Assembly (NCBI RefSeq): GCF_001194135.2
Contig: NC_068982.1
Location: 27,669,085 to 27,733,084 of the forward strand
DNA from: Octopus bimaculoides
Lineage: Eukaryota
Direction of reading: 5' to 3'
DNA length: 64,000 nt
The notes under the pieces were generated by a model. The model saw only the letters and a program-made list of their open reading frames with translations, was not told where the DNA came from and did no database searches. Position numbers and translations under genes: made by a program. Below are positions 10,827 to 64,000 of this stretch, piece after piece (the first letter of the stretch is position 1; each line of letters opens with the position of its first letter).

Positions 10827-12066
10827 TCAAGCTGAGTAAAAAGTAAGCAATGGTTTCAAACATGAAATTCATCACAATTTCAACAATGCAGAAATTTTAT
10901 TCCTCAAAGTAAGTTCCATTACACTCAACACATTTTTGCCAACGAGTTACAGGTTTGTTTATTCCGGTGACATAAAAATCTAGAATTCTGGAGTGGATGA
11001 ACTCTCTGAACGTACTTTCAGCATCGGTTTGATTTTTGAACTCCTTCTCTCGCAGGAAACCATCAAGGTGCTTGAAAAAGTGATAGTCAGCAGGAGAAAG
11101 GTCTTGGGAATAAGCTGGGTGGGGAAGAACTTCATAGCCAAGTTCCCTCAACTTCTGGAGCATCATTAGTGAAACATGTGGTTGAGCATTGTCATGAACA
11201 ATGATTGGCCCTCTTCTGTTGACCAGTCTGGGATGGAAGAGTAGCAGTTTTTCGTTCATTTTAGCAATTTCATGGCAATATGTTTCTGCAGTAATGGTTT
11301 TAAAAGGTTTTAAGAAGTTATAGTAGATGAGTCCAGCAGTACACCACCAAACAGTCACCATAACCTTTGAAGAGCTCTGGTTTAGGGAAGGTTTTCGGTG
11401 CTTCATTTTGGTCCAACCACTGCAAAGAACATTTTTTATTATTGTATAGAATCCACTTTTCATTGCAAGTTACAATACAGTTGGATTGATCTGGTTACAG
11501 AGAAGAAGCGACAAGCAAATTTCATATCTGTGCATTATCTAATTTTCATTGAAATCATGTAGTACCCATTTGTCGAGCTTTTTTGATTTTCCGATTGCAT
11601 GCAAATGGTTACAGGCAGTTTTTTTGCTAACCTGAAGTTCTTTTGCCAGTTCTCAAGTGGTTTTACGTGGATATTTCTCAATGATGGTCTTTAATTGACC
11701 GTCATTGATGACAGATGGGCATCCATTATGCTTTCCAAGGCTCAGGTTTCCACTGCGAAATCATTTAAACCATTTTTGAGCTGACCACTCACTGGTCATT
11801 TCCTCACCAAACGTTTTGTTAATATCGCAGTTACAGCTACTTTACGTCCTTTTTTGAAGGAATATTGCACTTTGACAGTTCCATTTCAGATGATTGTAAC
11901 AATGATGAAAAAATGTCAATGTTAATTTATTGATGTATTTGGGCAAGTCTATGTTTGTATTATCAGACAATTGCAAAAGAATGTTTAAAAAATATCCAAA
12001 ATTTTGCAAAATTCCAGTACAAATTCTTCATGGTTCCAAACGTTGTTTACTTTTTACTCAACCTGA
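10827..12066 (-). mobile_element. Full-length (1240 bp) inactive mariner (DD34D-type) transposon in an RNPS1 intron
   Basis: TA-flanked TIRs TCAAGCTGAGTAAAAAGTAAGCAA and TCAGGTTGAGTAAAAAGTAAACAA. Transposase remnants WFK*FRSGNLSL, KWVLHD, TCNEKW, HDNAQPH and YSQDLSPADY, with stops and frameshifts in the N-terminal half; open frame 10897-11463. Confidence 0.93.
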
Positions 12067-25913: not shown

Positions 25914-26286
25914 NNNNNNNNNNNNNNNNNNNNNNNNNNNNNNNNNNNNNNNNNNNNNNNNNNNNNNNNNNNNNNNNNNNNNNNNNNNNNNNNNNNNNNN
26001 NNNNNNNNNNNNNNNNNNNNNNNNNNNNNNNNNNNNNNNNNNNNNNNNNNNNNNNNNNNNNNNNNNNNNNNNNNNNNNNNNNNNNNNNNNNNNNNNNNNN
26101 NNNNNNNNNNNNNNNNNNNNNNNNNNNNNNNNNNNNNNNNNNNNNNNNNNNNNNNNNNNNNNNNNNNNNNNNNNNNNNNNNNNNNNNNNNNNNNNNNNNN
26201 NNNNNNNNNNNNNNNNNNNNNNNNNNNNNNNNNNNNNNNNNNNNNNNNNNNNNNNNNNNNNNNNNNNNNNNNNNNNNNNNNNNNNN
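25914..26286. other. Assembly gap (373 N) flanked by poly-T
   Basis: N run; smaller gaps at 37085-37094 and 63006-63015. Confidence 0.99.
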
Positions 26287-33755: not shown

Positions 33756-34402
33756 AATTTGGTTTCTGGATCTGAAGAGTTTTGACTACATTGAAATACT
33801 GCAAATATTATTCTCTTAGCTTCAAGATAATTCTTGTCATTGCTTTGCTGTTTGTTATTCCTTTCAAAATCCCTTTGGGACTTGTAAAGTACCAGTCAAG
33901 TACTGGTGTAGGTGGGGGGAGTATTAATTAGCCCCATCCCCTCAAAATTGTTGGCCTAGTACCTAAATCAGAAACCATTATTTTCTGAAATTAGTTGTAA
34001 AACATTACTTATAGTAACTTATGGATTATCTGTCAGAATTGAGGAACTCTGTATGTTGTCCCTCAACCTGTTAGAAACAGTAGCTAATCAATCTCTCAAA
34101 CTTTTCACAGTTTTAAAAATGGAAGGACACATTAGATAATGTAGTCTTACTTACCCCTAAAAAGATTGGAGCTGATTAGGGTTGGAATTATTTTGAACAT
34201 GTCTCCTCTGCTTAGTCAGGTCTCACTTGGGGCTAAGTGGTAACAACTGGCAAGTAAAATAGGTAGCAGCTGTTAGTTTTTTGGGGTTTTTTTAAATAAC
34301 AAAATATATTTTATGTTGAACTAATATTTTTCTCCTAATTATTTTTGCTTATTTGTTTACTATCATGTTTAATTTTTTTGTGCGTGTGTTGTTTCTTTCC
34401 AG

Positions 34403-34938
34403 AAAAATTTTGGAACTAGGATGTGGTCTTGGTTTGACAGGCATAGTAATTTGCAAGAATTGCCAACCAACACATTTTTGCTTTACAGACTGTCACCCTC
34501 AAGTATTGTATCTCTTGTCTAAGAATATTGAACTCAACATGCTGCAAAACAATCAAAGTGAGACAGACAATACCCAGGAGGACATTCACTTATCACCTAT
34601 CAACATAAATAATAAAAACGATGAAAAAATAATGCGGAAGATTCGTCGACAGCTTAGTTTAAGTGCTGATAACAATACTTCAAATGACATGACTGATATC
34701 ATTGAGATCTGCCTGTCTCCATCTACACCTCCTAGTGATGAGAGTGAAATCATGCAGAAAGACCCTGTGGAAGATTTTGCAGATTTTGAGCTCTACTCTA
34801 AGTCATGGAAGAAGGACTCTGAAAGCAAAATTGCTACACTTAAAAAAAATGACAAAATTAGTGTTGCAAAACTGGACTGGGAGTGTTTCGATGATAGTTT
34901 TCTCAAATGGTATTGTCCAGAAGTTATCATTGCTGCAG
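34403..34938 (+). CDS. EEF2KMT: EEF2KMT exon (SAM-binding motif I plus long insertion)
   Basis: Acceptor tttctttccAG and donor G|gtatta. Contains KILELGCGLGLTG, FTDCH and VAKLDW...PEVIIAA (METTL21/family-16 motifs). Confidence 0.96.
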
Positions 34939-35575
34939 GTATTATCATCATCTATGTCATCAATAGTAATGCTGTGTTTCTTAATATTTCATATCATCAC
35001 TTGCTCTATTACTTCACTTGATCCAGTATTTTCTCTTTAGAATCATTATATTACCTTTATGTACAGTTCCTGCTAAATGAATTTCAAACCTTATGAGTCA
35101 TATTTCTGTACCTTTCAGTAAGTTACATCAGCCTTCAAGTTAGACAAAAATTCCCATTGTTGTTAACTAATCATAAAACTAGTTTCTCTTTTGAAAGTTT
35201 CATTTTTCAAATTGATAACCAGGAACTATTTCAGACTTTTATTCTATGAATTCTTTCAGTATGTTTTTTTTTGTTATTTAGTTTCTGTGTTAACTTGGGA
35301 GGTGGGTGTGATTTTTGCTAAAAACAATAATTGCCCTTCCTACCACAAAATTCTGAAGTGGTGGATTGCTTGTCAAGGCATATAATGTTATGTACCTTGA
35401 TTAAGAATAAAACACAACAGCTTTGAACTCTTGAAAATGTTGATAATCCTGTACTATAATTGTAGTAGCCCTGTAATTGCAATAGATTGAAATACATTTT
35501 GTTAAAAAAATTTTTTGTAATTTTCTTAGCGTTGTAAAACTGTGATTCATAACGATGAACTTCATTATCTTTCAG

Positions 35576-37084: not shown

Positions 37085-37094
37085 NNNNNNNNNN

Positions 37095-50539: not shown

Positions 50540-52882
50540 ATGGAAAATAAGCTATGTGAAAACCAGATTAAATATAAAATGCAGTCTCAAAGGATTGATG
50601 TTCCTGATGAGATGTATAAAGAGATTGGAAAAACATCATACCGCTGTGATATTTGTAAAAAGGTATTCTCTCAAAAAAGGGACTTAACAAGACACATACG
50701 TGTTCATACAGGAGTTAAACCATACCATTGTGATGTCTGTGGTGAATCGTTCTCTCACAATAGTAACTTGACTACTCACAAACGGATTCATACAGGAGAA
50801 AGGCCTTATCAGTGTGATATCTGTGGTAAATCGTTTTCTATAACAAGTAATTTAACTAAACACAAGCGTATTCATACAGGAGAGAAACCATATCACTGTG
50901 ATATCTGTGATAAATCATTCTCTATAACTAGTAGCTTAACTGCTCACAAGCAAACTCATACAGGAAAGAAACCATCTCAGTGTCATATATATGGCAAATC
51001 ATTCTCCTTGACAAATCACAAGTATATTCATACAGAAAATAAGCCATATCCCTGTGATACGTGTGGAAAATCATTCTCTCGAAGTGGTGAATTAACTAAG
51101 CACAAACGTATCCATACAGGAGAGAAGCCATATCACTGTGATATCTGTAGTAAATCATTCTCTATAACAAGTAACTTGACTAAGCATAGACGCATTCATA
51201 CAGGAGATAAGCCATATCACTGTGATATCTGTGGTGAATCATTTTCTCACAGTAGTAACTTAACCAGACATAAACGTAGTCATACAGGATATAAGCCATA
51301 TCATTGTGATATCTGTGGTAAGACTTGCTCTCAGAGTAGTGACTTGACTATTCACAAACGTATTCATACAGGTGAGACACCATATCGCTGTGACATCTGT
51401 GGTAAATCCTTTTCTCAAACAATTAACTTATCGAGACACAAACACATTCATACAAGAGAGAATTCATATCAGTGTCGTATCTCTGGTAAATCAGTTTCTG
51501 AAGCAAACCACTCAAGTAGATGTAATGATCCAGGCGTTAAGCCACCTCACTTGGAGGAATCAATCTCTCAAAGTGCTAACCTAACTACTCAGAAACTTAT
51601 TGATACAGGAGGGAGACCATATTGCTGTGATATCTGTGGTAAATCATTCTCCAAAAGTAGTGACTTGACTACTCACAAATATGTACATGCAGAAGGAAAA
51701 CCATCTTCTGATATCTATAGTAAATCATTCTCACAAAGTACTGAATTAACTGCTCACAAAGATATTGATAAAAGAGAGAAACCTTACCCTTGTGATGTTT
51801 GTGGTAAATCATTCTCTGAAAGTAGTGAATTAACTATTCACAGACGTATTCATACGAGTGAGAAGCCATATCACTGTGATATTTGTGGTGATTCATTCTC
51901 TCAAAATAGTCACTTATCCACTCATAAACATATTCACACAGGAGAAAAATCTTATCACTGTGATATCTGTGGTAAATCATTCCCTCAGATTAGTGAATTA
52001 ACTACACACAAAGGTATTCATTCAGAAGAGAAACCATATCACTGTGATACCTGTGGTAAATCATTCTCTCGAAGTATTGAATTAACTGGTCACAAACATA
52101 TTCATACTGGAGAGAAGCCACTTCACTGTGATATCTGTGGCAAGTCGTTCTCTATAACAAGAAACTTAAATAAACACAAACATATTCATACAGGAGAGAA
52201 ACCATATCACTGTGATATCTGTGATAAATCATTCTCTACAAAAGGACTTTTAACTAGACATAAACGCATTCACACGGGAGATAAGCGATTTCAATGTACA
52301 ATCTGTGGCAAATCGTTCTGTCAGAGTAGTGAGTTGATTACACACAAACGCATTCATACAGGAGAGAAACCATATCACTGTAATATTTGTGGTAAATCAT
52401 TCTCTATAACTAGTAGCTTAACTATTCACATACGTATTCATACAGGTGAGAAACCATATCATTGTGATATCTGTGGTAAATCATTTTCTCGAAGTGGTGA
52501 ATTAACTGGTCACAAACGTATTCATACAGGAGAGAAGCCATATTACTGTGATATGTGTGGTAAATCATTCTCTCAAAGGAGTGAGTTAACCACTCACAAA
52601 CGTATTCATACAGGTGAAAAACCATATCATTGTGATATCTGTGGTAAATCATTTCATACAAGTAGTAACTTACGTACCCACATACGTGTTCATACAGGAG
52701 AAAAACCATATCACTGTGAAATTTGTGGTGAATCGTTTTCTCAAAATGGTAGTTTATCTACTCATAAGCGTATTCATATAGGTGAGAAACTATATCTCTG
52801 TGATATTTGTGGCAAATCATTCTCTCAAAATGGTCACTTAACTACTCACAAACGAATTCATTCAGGAGAAAGTCCACATTAA
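50540..52882 (+). CDS. Multi-finger C2H2 zinc-finger protein (780 aa; 23 intact and 4 degenerate fingers; no recognisable effector domain)
   Basis: Uninterrupted ORF of Y.C..CGKSF.....[10 protein letters not shown] repeats after a 33-aa N-terminus, typical of the cephalopod C2H2-ZNF expansion. Confidence 0.97.
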
Positions 52883-58000: not shown

Positions 58001-58689
58001 TTTACTCTTTCTCATTCATACTGTCTCCGTCAATTTTCTGTCATAACGAGAGTTATTTCCCCTGATAACTTATTTTGTCTTGGATTAACTGTTTATGTAA
58101 GGCCTCTGAGTGTAAGAATTTTCCCCTTTGTTACATGTCAACCTCAAGCCAACAAAATGTTATATATACATATTTATAGATATTTACTTTCCTGTTAGAT
58201 GTAAATTGGATCTTAAACAAAAACCTTTACATCATCTTGTGACCAGAACTACAAGTTGTGAGACTCATTGTCCTCGTAAACTTCCAAGTTTGATTATAAT
58301 TCAGGCCTATGCCATATTTCACATTCTGACTACATTGATAGGTAAGTTTTAAATATGTTGAGTCATGAATTCGATATTTTGTTTTAGGGAAATACAGGCT
58401 GTATTAAGATGTTTTTCTTATTTTAGTCCTCACTTGTTTAGTTTCAGATTAATATCGATCGAGCAGATCTATGATAGTTCCAACTATAACCTGTAACCAT
58501 CCAGAAAACTCCCAGCAGGGTTAATATCAGACTTGATTATCAAATGTATCTTTTCCTTTTCTTGGTGGTGTGATTTAATTGCTATTTGCTGAAATTATAG
58601 GCATTCTTTCGCTTTGAGGTCACATTTTGGTAATGGAAATATTCAATATTGACACAATTCGACGAAGTCCAGGTTGACGTGTCGAACAT

Positions 58690-58900
58690 GCAACTCCGCT
58701 TTTTCTTTTGATTTATTTATTTTTGGCTAATCTACACGAGTGTGCTCCCCGCCCCCATCGACTTTATTTCCTCATAACTTTCAGAAAAATGGATATTTTT
58801 AAATGAAATTTTTAACAAATACTCTTCAGATGGTGTAGACTCCGATTATATCGAAATCTGTTGTGAATGTTAATAGGAATGACCAGTTAACAGCAAATAA
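58690..58900. repeat. Dispersed DNA-transposon-like repeat; inverted copy at ~62990-63180
   Basis: CATAACTTTCAGAAAAATGGATATTTTTAAATGAAATTTT is matched in reverse complement at ~63095-63135. Confidence 0.55.
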
Positions 58901-61081
58901 ATTAGACATAATTCTTTCCTGAAAAATAATGGCCTTCATCACAATTCAACTTTAACCTGGGTCTAGTGAAGCTACTAAGCTTACTGAACATGTAGATGGA
59001 TGTCTATAGAAGTGTACAAAAAGAATTTGTCACTAGAAATATTCATTGTAAAGACATTTATGATGCTCATTAACCTAATTTTATTATTAGGTGTATGGTG
59101 TGGCAAATATGAAATAACATATAGTCTTGGAGAACGGACCTTTTTACTGTGTTCTATGTGCAAAGCATTTTATTCAAAATTCAATTCAAATTGGTGATGT
59201 CTCCACTGAAATGGATGTGAGTACCTTTGAACAATATGAGGAAATATGGCAGCAAATGTTTGTTGGCTGCTAGCTTATTTGGTAATGACCTTCGTGTCCT
59301 CAGATATTGCATGTTTGGTCAATTGGCTTGGAAGCAAAAATTAGACAGCACTTTGAATTTCTTGACTACTAATGATTGAATGTTTGCTATAGTCAGCTAA
59401 ATGACTGACTTTGGCAGCGATTCTCTTGAACAAGTCATTTGTAAAGCTCTTCACGACAGTCATAGTTTTTGATTTAAAGGGAATTTAGTTGTGATATATT
59501 AGCTCTTATCTATACTATTTGAAACCATTTTACCTTGATAGACTTCTTGATATCTTTGCTATCCAACATCATTTATGATCACTGCAAACTCTACAAGCGC
59601 TTTGTTGGTCTCTGACAACTGATTATTTAGGCTCCACAGGCAAGTGACCATTTGGAACACTTGAATTTAATTGATTAACATTGTTTCTTGCATTGTCAGC
59701 ATATATGAAACTACCTGAAGTTTAATTTGCTTCAACTAAAGATTACTTGACATATGTGATAGTTTAAATGAACCATCATGTATATTTCTTGATATATCTA
59801 TCATATCTGACAGTAGAAAAAGAGAACAAGCAAAAGGAAAGAAGCAGGCTTATCTGGAGGTGTTTAATTTTCAGTGAATGAAACTACAATGAATATGTTG
59901 GTGCTGCTACATCAGCTTATATGGGGTCTGGCATGTAATATTCATGATCTGCACCTTTTGGTATTTGCAGGAAATACTATTGGAGATAACGATAGATATT
60001 GATACTCCGCTATTGTAGTCAGTCATTCATAAAGGTTAAGGATTAATAACCTACTGTCCAGTGTTTGAAGTACAACATCCAAGTTGAACTTCCTAAAATA
60101 ACCAGTCAATTGCAACTGACCATTGTAAATTTTATTATTACAACCATTTCACTTTGAGGGGTTGATTTACCTAAAGAACTAGTAATTTCCAATGTTTTTG
60201 ATGGTCAGATTCATTCAAAATACATCAAAAATCAGAGAAAAAGCAAATTTCACTTTCAAAGTGAAACAGGGTAATAGTAAAACTTTACCCTGATATCATT
60301 TAAAAGAATATTTATTACATCCAGAGTAGTTTTCAAAAATGTTTAACTTGAGTTTGCCCACACATATTTATTAGCTTGAATTCAAATAAATTCATTATAA
60401 TCAGTAGATGTAGTTTGGGTGCATGTAGGTTCTTAGTTTGCATATGCTTGCATATCTACATCAAACAGAAAGTAGGTTGAGATTTGAAGGAGAGTTGCTA
60501 GCTATACTCACCATGCCTAGCTACTACATTGATGCTTGCTCATTGACTTATGTACACACATATTATGTGTATATAAGAATTATGCATGTGAGGACACAGA
60601 AAGGATTCCAATAAATATTCACCACGTACATACAGACCCAGACGCACATGTAACCAAAGACATGTAGACGTGTTTTCTCAGAAAATGAAGAAACCATTTT
60701 ACTTCACTACAGAAGTAGGAAGAAAATATTCTCAAATATATTAAGAGCAACAAACGTAGATTACCTTGTGTCTAACCATTTTTTTTTATAAGTACGATAT
60801 TTTGAGTAACCATTATTTCGTGTTCACCATGCTTCTTGCTACCTAGTGTCACATTCTCTTCATACGTACACAAGTGTATATAATAAAATATTCTGTATGA
60901 ATATATCGACAGTAGAGTATGTTTTTGGTTGGAACCACATGCACCATCCACAAGTGGATGAGCGACTTTAAGACGCATATGGTTGTATAACAATACTGTA
61001 CAACATGAAACTATGTAATGGTACCGACCAGCATGACACAGCTGTTCAAGAACTCAAAGGTGTTGTTTTCAACACCATGCA

Positions 61082-61828
61082 GGGATCTTTCTGATTTGAC
61101 GGGCACCACTTTTCATTCATGTTTTATGTAGTTTTTTTTGGTACCGAAACACTTTCAAACTTCGAATACTTGTATATTTTGTGTTATAGAACAGATAAAA
61201 ATTTTTGTATTCGAAGTTATTTCATGTAAAAATTGTCGTATTTCGGTAATTTCAACCAATCACTGACGTCTATTGAGGTGAAAACAATTACTGCCGTGGA
61301 ATGTAAACAACATGTTCTAACGGTGTTATGGGATCTTTTCCCTTGAATAAAATTAGTGCCGTAGTTTGTCAACAACAACTATCCGTGATACTGTTATTTA
61401 TGACATCGTTCGTGCGTTTGTACTGGTTTTAGCTTTAGGGTTAGGGTTCGGGTTTTAGAGTTAGGGTTATGATTATTTTTGCCATAACCTCACTCATAAC
61501 CCTAACCCTAAAACTCATAACCATAACCCCAACCCTAAACCCTTACTAGGAAATAATGATATAATTAAACAAGGAATAACACTCTTGACACCGGCAAAAA
61601 TTATTGTTTACAAAACAGCAGTAACTGTATTCAGCTGAACAGACGTCAGTGATTGGTTGAAATTACAGAAATACGACAACTTTAACATGAAATAACTTGC
61701 GATGTACAAATTTTTGTTAAGAAGGCTAAGAGAAAAAGTTGTTTTATACGACACATTCTACCTATATCCCATGTGTGAAAGTGTTTCGTTAAGAAAACAA
61801 GTGGTGCCCGTCAAATCAGAAAGATCCC
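61082..61828. mobile_element. 747-bp non-autonomous foldback DNA transposon with 30-bp perfect TIRs, 6-bp TSD and central inverted telomere-like repeats
   Basis: TIR GGGATCTTTCTGATTTGACGGGCACCACTT at both ends; TSD CATGCA at 61076-61081 and 61829-61834; subterminal arms pair for >200 bp; TTAGGG-like block 61434-61469 faces a CCCTAA-like block 61484-61544. Confidence 0.9.
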
Positions 61829-61982
61829 CATGCAGTCATAAAAAAAAACAAAAAAACTAGATGATGATGTTGACTTCACACGTGTCTTTAGATATTTGGA
61901 TAAGGTCCACGGCTTACATATCTCGAAGTTTCTAGGCACCGAAGATGAGATGAGACTGAAAGTATTTTGAAATGATAAACAT

Positions 61983-62001
61983 TATCGATATTGTGACGTC
62001 A
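61983..62001. promoter_or_regulatory. Adjacent DRE (TATCGATA) and CRE (TGACGTCA) palindromes
   Basis: Exact motifs at 61983-61990 and 61994-62001 in a CpG-enriched patch. Confidence 0.4.
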
Positions 62002-63350
62002 TAATGACATGAGCGAAATTATTGAAGTCTTTCGACGGGACGAATGTTACGTAAATTTATTTCCCACATACATTCACGCATTTATATATGTCCATGTATC
62101 TCTCAACACCCTATCCTCTCTTTCTTTCCATACACACACATAACTCTGTCTCTCACTATCTCTCCCTTTCCCTCAAATAAATCGGCAAAGCTTATGCATA
62201 CGCATAAAATGCCTAAGAGCCAACGAGTGAGTATCTACGTGGTTGCTAGACATGGTAAGCATAACAAGCAAATCCCCCCCCTCCAATCTCAACATATTCT
62301 TTTATGAAAGTACATAGTCGTGAAGCAAGTAAGGAACTACATCCAAACAAATTCTTTACTTTGTAATGTTTCTATGTATGGTTGGAGATCTGTTTTCGGA
62401 ATATCATCACCTAACCCAACACCAATCCTCCATAAATTTCTAATCTCTTCCATTCATTTGCCCATCCGTAGATGTTTGCTCAACAAGCCTAGAATGTGTT
62501 ATATTTAGCAAGTAGTCCGATAAAACTTAAAGGGTTGTTTGGCAAGTGGTTGTGGTAGCTAGGTATGTAGAACAGAAGGTGATGTCTAGTTAAGAGTTCT
62601 AGTTGTTTTGGAGAGGCAACTGTGTATTTAGATGTAAAGAGGATTTAGTTGTGAGGGTATGTTACCTTTTGTTTGTACTATTTGAAACCCAAGTGTGTTG
62701 AGTGCATGGAAATCTCCCTCCAATTATGTTCTTTCTGAGCGTTGTGTTTTGCATTAGTTCTTTTGCAAATATATTTCGTAAACTACACCAACCAGAAATC
62801 GCAAGTTAAGAGCATTTTTGAAAATTGTCATAAACAAACCTACTATTCAACGCGCAAGTTTGTTTACATTCACTTTCGCTATTTTGAGTTTCTTTTATTT
62901 ATTTATTTTGCTTACATCGTTTACCGTGAATTTAGTAGTTAATAAAATTATTATAATGTATCATTGTTTCTTATTTACTGTACCCTCAAAGAACATCGTG
63001 CCATANNNNNNNNNNCCCCCACCCCCATTCCAAAACACTTTCACCGAAATGTTTTGTATATTCAGAATCTACATAATAAATAATATGTGCATAGAAAATT
63101 TCATTAAAAAATATTCATTTTTCTGAAAGTTATGACCTTCCAAAGTCGTGGGGGGGGGGTACAACTCTGTAGTTATGCCAATTATTTTACAAAACTGATA
63201 CAGTACACTGGAAACTAAAGGCCATTACTAAATGATCGAAATTAGTTTTCCTTTCTGGCTACCAGACATGACAAAACTATCATTTAAGAATCACATGGAA
63301 AATAGTTTAATGGAAGTAAACTAAAATTCATGTAGCTTCAAGTATACTGA

Positions 63351-63467
63351 TCACGTGAGAAACACTTTTAACCAATGACATTCAAGCGCGCCAAACTGTA
63401 ACTTGCTTGTGGAGCCTACTGACTAACTATAAAAAGAGTCAGCTGTTGGAGATTGGCAAAACATTCG
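63351..63467 (+). promoter_or_regulatory. Replication-dependent histone promoter
   Basis: CCAAT 63372-63376, E2F-like GCGCGCCAAA 63386-63395, TATAAAAA 63428-63435 and cap-box-like CATTCG 63462-63467, upstream of the H2B ATG. Confidence 0.75.
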
Positions 63468-63491
63468 TAGAGCTTGCAGTTAATGTAAATA

Positions 63492-63731
63492 ATGTCAGAC
63501 AGCGAAGATATCAAGAAACCCGTCAAGCCAAATTTAGCCGCATCGAAAAGCAAGAAAGTAAAGCGAAAGAGGAAGGAGAGCTATTCCAACTACATCTATA
63601 AAGTTATGAAACAGGTCCATCCTGATACTGGAATATCCAACAAAGCCATGATCATCATGAATAGCTTCGTTAACGATTTGTTCTAGAGAATCGCTGCAGA
63701 AGCCAGTCGTTTGGCTCACAACAGACGTTCA
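63492..63731 (+). pseudogene. H2B: Histone H2B pseudogene, 5' two-thirds
   Basis: MSDSEDIKK...[58 protein letters not shown] at 63684-63686 replaces Glu, the Tyr of AHYN is deleted, and homology breaks at ~63732. Confidence 0.92.
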
Positions 63732-63807
63732 TAATTAGGAACTCGTACCGAAAGATCGCCATATCATTGCTATTCATGATAAAGATAACTTTCATGAAAA
63801 TATATTT

Positions 63808-63823
63808 GGCCCTGAAAAGGGCC
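63808..63823 (-). terminator. Histone mRNA 3' stem-loop (inverted copy)
   Basis: Minus strand GGCCCTTTTCAGGGCC is the canonical histone stem-loop, 27 nt after the stop; CATGAAAG (possible U7-binding element) lies ~12 nt further on. Confidence 0.93.
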
Positions 63824-63850
63824 GATGATTTCTGGAAATACACCAAGTGT

Positions 63851-63955
63851 TTATTCGCTGCTAGTGTATCTTGTAACTGACTTCGTACCCTCAGATATTG
63901 CGTGTTTGGCTAATTGGCCAGGAATCAAAAGCCGAATAGCATTTTGAATTTCTCG
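63851..63955 (-). pseudogene. H2B: Histone H2B C-terminal third, inverted
   Basis: Minus strand translates [34 protein letters not shown]. Confidence 0.93.
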
Positions 63956-63973
63956 ACAGCAGTCGAGAACTGT

Positions 63974-64000
63974 CGAGAAATTCAAAATCCTATTCGGCTT
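63974..64000 (+). pseudogene. H2B: Histone H2B C-terminal third resuming in forward orientation (runs off window)
   Basis: CGAGAAATTCAAAATCCTATTCGGCTT = REIQNPIRL, a mirror of the inverted copy with one mismatch. Confidence 0.8.

What the first reader, a model, noticed from the sequence alone, without database searches (positions are those of the whole stretch)
63731..64000. Fold-back inverted duplication splits the H2B gene
Seen: the forward gene breaks after CGT TCA. Then come the 3' flank, stem-loop and C-terminal third in reverse (to 63959), a 10-nt spacer CAGTCGAGAA, and the C-terminal third again in forward orientation. The arms 63929-63959 and 63970-64000 match at 30/31 up to the window edge. 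The junction holds a micro-hairpin (TTCTCGAC-AGCA-GTCGAGAA) and a short direct repeat (GTCGAGAA-CT-GTCGAGAA). Known: such junctions typify replication template-switch rearrangements, but also chimeric-read artefacts. Inference: a real template-switch event; the single arm mismatch argues weakly for age. A transcript through the locus would form a ~230-bp hairpin, a possible source of histone-targeting endo-siRNA.
Basis: partly seen in the sequence, partly recalled or inferred. Interest (0 to 1): 0.7.

Follow-up and report, generated by a model that had tools for sequence, protein, structure and literature searches.

The report
Inverted duplication in octopus H2B pseudogene
A dead copy of an octopus-specific histone H2B variant gene carries its own tail end flipped and inserted into its middle; this is an ordinary kind of rearrangement, it lies in a fragmented short-read assembly at the window edge, and it cannot yet be told apart from an assembly error.

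Summary
The forward H2B reading frame stops matching after 63730/63731. Then come 228 nt of its own 3' flank, histone stem-loop and C-terminal third in reverse (63732-63959), a 10-nt spacer, and the C-terminal third forward again (63970-64000, 30/31 match, none expected by chance).

New facts change the reading:
- The window is Octopus bimaculoides GCA_001194135.2, chromosome CM046602.1, an assembly of 713,915 contigs.
- The gene is the orthologue of copy D of a four-copy, Octopus-specific H2B-variant cluster. All O. sinensis and O. vulgaris copies seen are collinear.
- The copy is a pseudogene apart from the split, with an in-frame TAG (63684-63686) and a 3-nt deletion.
- A 10-N gap lies 165 bp upstream of the promoter homology. 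On its far side the promoter and N-terminal block run opposite to synteny, so a flipped small contig or a second rearrangement is needed.
- Only 31 nt of the second arm are visible, so the "~230-bp hairpin" is extrapolated.

Best reading (about 0.55): a real, lineage-specific template-switch or fold-back inverted duplication in a decaying paralogue, with no function. Misassembly is about 0.35. A hairpin-RNA/siRNA locus is about 0.05, with no evidence. Interest is low.

The parts
63006..63015 (.). 10-N assembly gap (contig boundary) just upstream of the rearranged gene copy
   Evidence: Homology to O. sinensis downstream block D' runs up to 63003 on its left. The sequence on its right (63016-63179) has no counterpart near the O. 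sinensis gene.
63180..63491 (+). Upstream/promoter region of H2B-variant copy D orthologue (CCAAT at 63372, TATAAAA at 63428)
   Evidence: 89.3% identical to O. sinensis L002 20104-20413. The orientation is opposite to that expected from synteny.
63492..63731 (+). N-terminal two-thirds of the H2B-variant coding sequence, disabled by an in-frame TAG (63684-63686, ancestral GAG) and a 3-nt deletion (between 63717 and 63718, Tyr codon lost). Homology ends at 63730/63731 (junction 1).
   Evidence: 94.1% to the O. sinensis D CDS; 10 synonymous and 3 non-synonymous differences. Pfam PF00125 Histone, E=3.3e-13. The 64-aa ORF is identical to UniRef member P0220.
63732..63850 (-). Inverted 3' flank and 3' UTR, including the histone 3' stem-loop (63783-63828; core GGCCCTTTTCAGGGCC at 63808-63823 read on the minus strand)
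   Evidence: Rfam RF00032, 37.9 bits. 95.5% identical to the O. sinensis D 3' UTR/flank. The outermost 14-28 nt (63732-63759) align only partly (GATCTTTCGGTA) to the O. sinensis flank.
63851..63959 (-). Inverted stop codon and C-terminal 36 codons ([36 protein letters not shown]); left arm of the palindrome
   Evidence: 88.7% identical to the O. sinensis D CDS, with 7 synonymous and 5 non-synonymous differences.
63960..63969 (.). 10-nt spacer CAGTCGAGAA. It is a 9/10 tandem copy of the first 10 nt of the forward arm, and it pairs over 8 bp with the end of the left arm (junction 2).
63970..64000 (+). Forward copy of the start of the C-terminal third ([10 protein letters not shown]...), right arm, cut by the window end. 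It carries CCT (Pro) where the left arm has the ancestral-like GCT (Ala).

Best explanation
This is the O. bimaculoides orthologue of copy D of an Octopus-specific cluster of replication-type H2B variant genes. These genes have the N-terminus [16 protein letters not shown]... and a 3' stem-loop, and are annotated 'late histone H2B.L4-like'. In this lineage the copy has died.

It carries three lesions:
- A GAG-to-TAG nonsense change.
- A one-codon deletion.
- A fold-back rearrangement. After codon ~80 the sequence jumps to about 120 nt past the stop codon on the opposite strand, runs backwards through the stem-loop and the last 36 codons, and turns forward again almost exactly where it left. 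About 12 nt are lost. A 10-nt near-duplicate is left at the centre.

The most likely origin (inferred, not shown) is one replication template switch, or fold-back priming at a broken end, using the TCGA-containing micro-palindrome GTCGAGAA/TTCTCGAC. A small revision of the centre then made the palindrome asymmetric. The product is a non-coding relic with no function.

The unit as assembled runs against synteny on the far side of a 10-N gap. Either the small contig that holds it is flipped in the scaffold, or a second ~1.3-kb inversion occurred.
For: - Identity of the locus: an exact 22,343-nt match to GCA_001194135.2 CM046602.1.
- Family and orthology: 88% amino-acid identity to O. sinensis XP_029632951.1. 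The best DNA match of both the forward part (90.3%) and the inverted part (90.4%) is copy D of O. sinensis.
- Ancestral collinear state: O. sinensis copies A, B and D are intact collinear genes with forward stem-loops, as are O. vulgaris A and B. Copy C is a collinear pseudogene in both species.
- Breakpoints: the forward part ends at CDS nt 242 and both arms begin at nt 255.
- The arms are not identical (63940 G versus C). The left arm keeps the ancestral-like base. This is not expected if one stretch of reads had simply been used twice.
- Both junctions are continuous sequence without Ns.
- The cluster shows other decay products. There is a second pseudogene at 59240-59740. An orphan inverted 3' fragment is conserved in O. 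sinensis and O. vulgaris.
- The excess of synonymous changes (10:3 and 7:5) shows the copy was constrained for much of the ~34 My since the split from O. sinensis (date from PMC10700109). The lesions are therefore fairly recent.
Against: - No independent read, assembly or individual could be consulted. The protein collection holds no ORF with the junction peptide. The 64-aa ORF is on record only from UniRef.
- The assembly is highly fragmented, with 713,915 contigs in 2.34 Gb (PMC10700109).
- A contig boundary (N10) lies next to the unit, and the promoter/N-terminal block is oriented against synteny. So at least one more anomaly, biological or technical, is present.
- Only 31 nt of the second arm are visible.
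- Microhomology at junction 1 cannot be checked, because the native forward flank lies beyond the window.
Confidence: 0.55

Rival explanations
1. Assembly artefact. The true locus is a collinear, possibly still pseudogenised, copy D on the minus strand of the window, as synteny predicts. Short k-mer contigs broke inside a gene family with near-identical paralogues in both orientations. They were then mis-joined, mis-oriented or mis-closed, giving a false inverted block and a false palindromic centre.
For: - A 10-N contig boundary lies 165 bp upstream of the promoter homology.
- The block 63180-63730 runs against synteny, while 61820-63003 and 63762-63956 run with it.
- The assembly has 713,915 contigs, about 3.3 kb on average (PMC10700109).
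- In sister species the cluster holds at least four paralogues in alternating orientation that share long exact words. This is the classic setting for graph mis-traversal.
- v2 of the assembly re-scaffolds the v1 contigs (from memory). The presence of the 64-aa ORF in the older annotation is therefore not independent support.
Against: - Neither orientation of the contig restores collinearity. The C-terminal/3' block is inverted relative to the N-terminal block inside continuous sequence without Ns.
- False joins without supporting reads normally stay as gaps.
- The arms differ at 63940, and the exact inner arms are only 19 nt. A k-mer assembler could therefore thread a real centre (plus inference).
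- No other gene-type short-spacer palindromes occur in the window. The other two gaps sit in an (AT)n repeat or homopolymer runs.
Confidence: 0.35
2. Functional hairpin-RNA (hpRNA) locus. The retained histone promoter drives a transcript that reads through the inverted block and the forward arm and folds into a long dsRNA. Dicer processes it into endo-siRNAs that act on the intact H2B-variant paralogues.
For: - CCAAT and TATA elements are conserved with O. sinensis.
- The visible centre folds strongly.
- The inverted block keeps 26-38-nt exact matches to the 3' ends of O. sinensis paralogues A, B and D. 80-121 of its 208 21-mers have 2 or fewer mismatches to them.
- In Drosophila, hpRNAs arise from inverted copies of target-gene fragments close to the progenitor, with arms of about 200 bp. 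They often target young testis chromatin-protein genes (PMC10317233, PMC10292708).
Against: - There is no transcript or small-RNA evidence.
- The second arm is seen for only 31 nt.
- Nothing shows conservation of the hairpin. It is absent from O. sinensis and O. vulgaris.
- Young inverted duplications are expected by chance in decaying gene clusters.
- This reading requires the rearrangement to be real in the first place.
Confidence: 0.05
3. A different real architecture. The syntenic minus-strand gene is the original. Its N-terminal part and promoter lie beyond 64000. The forward block 63180-63731 is an inverted partial duplicate of promoter plus N-terminus inserted into the 3' flank. The 31-nt forward arm is only a short fold-back scar at the C/N boundary.
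For: - The inverted block 63732-63959 and the downstream block 61820-63003 both have the orientation predicted by synteny. Only 63180-63731 does not.
- It is the forward block that carries the disabling TAG and the deletion.
Against: - It needs two separate inverted events.
- The ~570 bp that separate gene and downstream block in O. sinensis (L002 20866-21436) are missing.
- The palindromic centre is unexplained if the forward arm is short.
Confidence: 0.05

Closest known systems
Octopus 'late histone H2B.L4-like' variant cluster (O. sinensis XP_029632951.1 / XP_029632952.2; O. vulgaris CAI9718799.1 / CAI9718800.1; O. bimaculoides A0A0L8H5A0, A0A0L8H502)
   Same: - Same distinctive N-terminus and histone fold, with 88% amino-acid identity.
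- Same promoter and 3' stem-loop.
- Syntenic position, orthologous to copy D.
   Different: - The reading frame is broken by a TAG and a codon deletion.
- The last third plus 3' end is inverted and partly duplicated.
Replication template-switch / fold-back inverted duplications (FoSTeS/MMBIR-type events and the four-point 'template switch mutation' model; named from general knowledge)
   Same: - An inverted copy of adjacent sequence is inserted at the point of departure.
- The return point nearly coincides with the departure point, with a small loss of ~12 nt.
- There are short palindromic or direct repeats at the centre.
- The ancestral state in outgroups is collinear.
   Different: - At 228 nt the copied stretch is longer than typical short template-switch mutations and far shorter than disease-type inverted duplications.
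- Microhomology at the first junction cannot be checked.
- The event itself is inferred, not observed.
Drosophila hairpin-RNA loci born from inverted fragments of their target genes (for example Dsim-hp58, hp-tHMG cluster; PMC10317233) and, from general knowledge, mouse oocyte pseudogene inverted-repeat siRNA sources
   Same: An inverted repeat made of a fragment of a nearby multi-copy chromatin-protein gene, lying behind a usable promoter. The expected arm length (~200 bp) is similar.
   Different: - No small RNAs, no Dicer dependence and no transcript have been shown.
- The second arm is seen for only 31 nt.
- The organism is a cephalopod, for which I know of no described hpRNA pathway.
False inverted or duplicated segments in draft short-read assemblies
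   Same: - Fragmented assembly.
- A neighbouring gap.
- An orientation conflict with synteny.
- A multi-copy family in both orientations (PMC10700109).
   Different: - The junctions are continuous sequence.
- The arms are not identical.
- Flipping the contig does not remove the inversion.

Membership tests
Histone H2B (Octopus H2B.L4-like variant cluster) | Histone-fold sequence similarity to H2B | tested here: met
   PF00125, E=3.3e-13. 88% identity over the full length to P0011.
Histone H2B (Octopus H2B.L4-like variant cluster) | Intact open reading frame of ~117-119 codons | tested here: not met
   TAG at 63684-63686, a 3-nt deletion, and the frame broken at 63731. It is a pseudogene, not a functional member.
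Histone H2B (Octopus H2B.L4-like variant cluster) | Histone 3' stem-loop downstream of the stop codon on the coding strand | tested here: inconclusive
   A stem-loop is present (RF00032), but only on the inverted block. A forward one would lie beyond the window.
Histone H2B (Octopus H2B.L4-like variant cluster) | Orthologous, syntenic position in related species | tested here: met
   Window 58334-63003 is collinear (reversed) with O. sinensis L002 30259-21437. The gene parts match copy D best.
Template-switch / fold-back inverted duplication | Inverted copy of immediately adjacent sequence, with a collinear ancestral state | tested here: met
Template-switch / fold-back inverted duplication | Microhomology or micro-inverted repeats at the switch points | tested here: inconclusive
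   The centre has the 8-bp micro-hairpin, three TCGA cores and a 9/10 direct repeat. Junction 1 cannot be assessed without the native forward flank.
Template-switch / fold-back inverted duplication | Both copies of the duplicated segment present in full | not testable with these tools
   The forward arm is cut at 64000 after 31 nt. No called gene lies within reach to fetch the next stretch.
Template-switch / fold-back inverted duplication | Junctions supported by independent reads or an independent assembly | not testable with these tools
   No octopus reads or alternative O. bimaculoides assembly are in the collections. There is no junction ORF in the protein database.
hpRNA / endo-siRNA source locus | Long inverted repeat within one transcription unit | tested here: inconclusive
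   A promoter-like region and a 228-nt first arm are present, but the second arm is visible for only 31 nt.
hpRNA / endo-siRNA source locus | Dicer-dependent ~21-nt small RNAs from both arms, with a primary transcript | not testable with these tools
   No expression data are available.
hpRNA / endo-siRNA source locus | Extended complementarity to target genes | tested here: inconclusive
   There are 26-38-nt exact matches to O. sinensis paralogue 3' ends.
Assembly artefact | Proximity to a contig boundary and conflict with synteny | tested here: met
   N10 at 63006-63015. 63180-63730 is oriented against synteny.
Assembly artefact | Anomaly disappears when the contig is re-oriented | tested here: not met
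   In either orientation the C-terminal/3' block is inverted relative to the N-terminal block within gap-free sequence.
Assembly artefact | Identical arms, as if the same reads were used twice | tested here: not met
   One difference in 31 nt, at 63940. This is weak, because only 31 nt can be compared.

The most novel reading that the evidence does not exclude
The rearrangement is real, and the dead H2B-variant copy has become a newborn hairpin-RNA gene. Its intact histone promoter would drive a transcript with a stem of about 230 bp, ending at a normal histone 3' stem-loop. Its siRNAs would dampen the intact paralogues of this Octopus-specific, possibly germline, H2B variant cluster. That would be a cephalopod counterpart of the Drosophila hpRNA system, caught at birth.
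Probability: 0.05. Interest if true: 0.6.

Novelty: new member of a known kind. Interest (0 to 1): 0.2.

Why it matters
If real, it is a clean, datable example of a small template-switch inverted duplication in a cephalopod genome, with a collinear outgroup and both breakpoints within ~12 nt. It also marks birth-and-death turnover in an undescribed Octopus-specific H2B variant cluster.

Its practical value is mostly as a caution. The 64-aa 'protein' in UniRef is a pseudogene fragment. The local scaffold orientation in the O. bimaculoides reference is doubtful.

Only the unlikely hairpin-RNA reading would be of wider interest.

Tried and rejected
Attempts to see beyond position 64000:
- I looked up the window's 64-aa ORF, and the O. 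bimaculoides proteins P0015 and P0221, for their encoding contigs. None is on record.
- The only called gene nearby, the 780-aa zinc-finger gene, gives a locus that ends at window 62882.

Search for independent assemblies of the junction:
- I queried the protein collection with the junction-spanning minus-strand peptide joined to the variant-specific N-terminus. Only the three known Octopus clusters came back, with no junction ORF and no Logan-derived octopus contig.

Test of contig orientation:
- I looked for homology of 63016-63179 to the O. sinensis region between the gene and the downstream block, on either strand, to decide whether the contig after the gap is correctly oriented. Nothing exceeded the shuffled scores.

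Explanations considered and rejected:
- Two convergent genes fused by a deletion. Rejected because the inverted C-terminal block is followed by a forward C-terminal block, not by inverted N-terminal sequence.
- A transposon or foldback element. Rejected because both arms are gene sequence orthologous to O. sinensis copy D.
- A systematic gap-associated palindrome artefact. No other such palindromes occur in the window.
- An alternative genetic code or stop read-through for the TAG. The ancestral codon is GAG, and the frame is broken further downstream anyway.

Literature:
- A search for described octopus H2B variants found nothing relevant.
- The original O. bimaculoides genome papers are not held in the library.

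Full report
**1. What is in the sequence**

- An H2B-like frame starts at ATG 63492. It reads [79 protein letters not shown] and ends with CGT TCA at 63726-63731.
- From 63732 to 63959 the minus strand carries, in order, the last 36 codons of H2B ([36 protein letters not shown]), the stop codon, a 3' UTR, a histone stem-loop and about 50-75 nt of 3' flank.
- The stem-loop passes Rfam's curated threshold: RF00032, 63783-63828 minus, 37.9 bits against 34.
- After a 10-nt spacer (CAGTCGAGAA, 63960-63969), the start of the C-terminal third reappears forward (63970-64000).
- The two 31-nt arms match at 30/31, with the mismatch at 63940. No such match occurs in 100 shuffles.
The visible centre folds at -50.3 kcal/mol, z = -8.7.

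**2. Where the window comes from**

- A 780-aa single-exon zinc-finger ORF (50540-52882) is an exact called gene of Octopus bimaculoides GCA_001194135.2, chromosome CM046602.1.
- The fetched locus is identical to window 40540-62882 over all 22,343 nt.
- Window position p therefore equals record position p + 27669084.
- According to PMC10700109 this assembly has 713,915 contigs in 2.34 Gb.

**3. What the gene is**

- The closest proteins are not canonical H2B. They form a small Octopus-only group annotated 'late histone H2B.L4-like' or 'gonadal H2B'. The members found are O. sinensis P0011 (88% identity, full length), O. bimaculoides P0015 and P0221, and O. vulgaris P0218 and P0219.
- The O. 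sinensis locus (L002) holds four copies in alternating orientation within 20 kb: A(-) intact, B(+) intact, C(-) pseudogene, D(+) intact. An orphan inverted 3' fragment with a stem-loop lies between B and C. O. vulgaris shows A, B, the orphan fragment and C; its D lies beyond the fetched locus.
- Both the forward part (63180-63730, 90.3%) and the inverted part (63762-63956, 90.4%) of the window's copy match copy D best.
- The flanking 4.7 kb (58334-63003) are collinear, in reverse, with the sequence downstream of copy D in O. sinensis. The window therefore holds the orthologue of copy D.

**4. It is a pseudogene apart from the split**

- Against O. sinensis D, the forward part has GAG changed to TAG at 63684-63686 and a 3-nt deletion that removes the Tyr of ..LAQYNRRS...
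- The 64-aa ORF ending at that TAG is present as an unnamed UniRef member (P0220) in the P0011 cluster. So the stop is not a quirk of this window.
- Most other differences are synonymous: 10 against 3 in the N-terminal part and 7 against 5 in the C-terminal part.
- The coding part is more conserved (94.1%) than the promoter region (89.3%). The copy was therefore under constraint for much of the time since the species split, and it died fairly recently.

**5. Breakpoints**

- The forward part aligns to CDS nucleotides 1-242 of O. sinensis D. Both arms begin at nucleotide 255.
- About 12 nt (..ACCATCAGTAT..) are therefore missing. The point of departure and the point of return nearly coincide.
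- The inverted block runs out to about 120 nt past the stop codon. Its outermost 14-28 nt align only partly (GATCTTTCGGTA) to the O. sinensis flank.
- Without the spacer, the centre TTCTCGACAG|CTGTCGAGAA would be a perfect palindrome. The spacer is a 9/10 tandem copy of the first 10 nt of the forward arm, and three TCGA cores lie 10 nt apart.
- This is what a strand switch primed on a short palindromic word looks like, followed by a small revision of the centre. That is an inference from the known behaviour of such events, not a demonstration.

**6. New complications**

- A 10-N gap (63006-63015) lies 165 bp upstream of the promoter homology.
- To its left the window runs opposite to O. sinensis. 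So copy D should lie on the minus strand, as 3' flank, then C-terminus, then N-terminus, then promoter.
- The inverted block 63732-63959 has exactly that expected orientation. The promoter and N-terminal block 63180-63731 does not.
- The ~570 bp that separate gene and downstream block in O. sinensis are missing. 63016-63179 matches nothing there.
- Flipping the contig to the right of the gap would restore the order downstream block, 3' flank, gene. Even then the 228-nt block stays inverted relative to the N-terminal part, within gap-free sequence.
- So there is either a real fold-back plus a flipped small contig or a second inversion, or a contig-level misassembly. A third, less economical architecture is listed among the rivals: the original gene on the minus strand, with an inverted promoter/N-terminal duplicate in its 3' flank.

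**7. Real or artefact**

For a real event:
- Both junctions are continuous sequence.
- The arms differ at one base, and the left arm keeps the ancestral-like base.
- The exact inner arms are only 19 nt, so a k-mer assembler could thread a true centre. Simple re-use of the same reads would give identical arms that such an assembler cannot traverse (inference).
- No other gene-type short-spacer palindromes occur in the window.
- The cluster shows other truncated and decayed copies in three species.

For an artefact:
- The assembly is fragmented.
- A gap lies next to the unit.
- The orientation conflicts with synteny.
- The family has paralogues in both orientations that share 26-38-nt exact words.

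No independent reads or assemblies could be reached. I put the real event at about 0.55-0.6 and misassembly at about 0.35.

**8. Age and the hairpin**

- One mismatch in 31 nt gives 3.2%, with a binomial interval of roughly 0.1-17%. Neutral divergence to O. sinensis is about 7-11% over ~34 My (PMC10700109). The estimate therefore spans from well under 1 My to tens of My and says nothing useful.
- The '~230-bp hairpin' presumes a complete forward arm that nobody has seen.
- If it exists, and if the conserved CCAAT/TATA promoter is active, the transcript would carry a long stem. The inverted block still has enough exact identity to paralogue 3' ends for siRNA-type matching (with O. sinensis as proxy).
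- This resembles young Drosophila hpRNA loci, which are born from inverted fragments of nearby chromatin-protein genes (PMC10317233, PMC10292708).
- There is no expression evidence. The structure is absent from the sister species. I give this reading about 0.05.

**9. Verdict**

The feature is most likely a small, lineage-specific fold-back inverted duplication in an already decaying H2B-variant paralogue. That is an ordinary kind of event, it lies at the edge of the window in a fragmented assembly, and the chance that it is an assembly error is substantial. Interest is low (0.2). The next 2 kb of the chromosome record and read mapping across the two junctions would settle it.

Noticed in passing
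window 59240-59740 (minus strand): A second, older pseudogene of the same H2B-variant family. It has two in-frame stops, is about 60% identical to P0011, has a remnant of the promoter region, and has no recognisable stem-loop. No orthologous copy was found at the corresponding place in O. sinensis L002.
   Followed up: partly
window 50540-52882 (+): An intact 780-aa single-exon C2H2 zinc-finger gene. It is an exact match to a called gene of O. bimaculoides GCA_001194135.2 and was used to identify the source of the window.
   Followed up: yes
L002 10001-20773 (O. sinensis CM016860.1): The annotated protein XP_029632952.2 (P0005, 150 aa) is a chimeric gene model. It fuses most of H2B-variant copy B to part of copy D across a 10.7-kb 'intron'. 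It is probably an annotation artefact.
   Followed up: partly
L002 12497-12661 and L004 12610-12749: An orphan, inverted 3' end of an H2B-variant gene (last ~13 codons plus a perfect stem-loop) lies between copies B and C. It is conserved in O. sinensis and O. vulgaris, which shows that truncated inverted fragments persist in this cluster.
   Followed up: partly
window 63492-63686: The 64-aa truncated ORF is carried in UniRef as a protein (P0220, in the cluster of P0011). It is a pseudogene fragment ending at a nonsense mutation.
   Followed up: yes
window 10897-11463 (minus): A mariner/Tc1-type transposase remnant (Pfam PF01359, E=3.6e-16).
   Followed up: partly
window 34353-35021 (+): An exon-like ORF with a lysine methyltransferase domain (Methyltransf_16, PF10294, E=2e-9). 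It is probably part of a multi-exon gene.
   Followed up: no
window 61420-61546: Degenerate TTAGGG-like telomeric-type repeats arranged as a 53-nt inverted pair. They lie inside a region with larger inverted repeats (61197-61715), probably a transposable element.
   Followed up: no
window 25914-26286 and 37085-37094: The other two assembly gaps sit in homopolymer runs (poly-T/poly-A) and in an (AT)n microsatellite. These are typical short-read contig breaks.
   Followed up: partly
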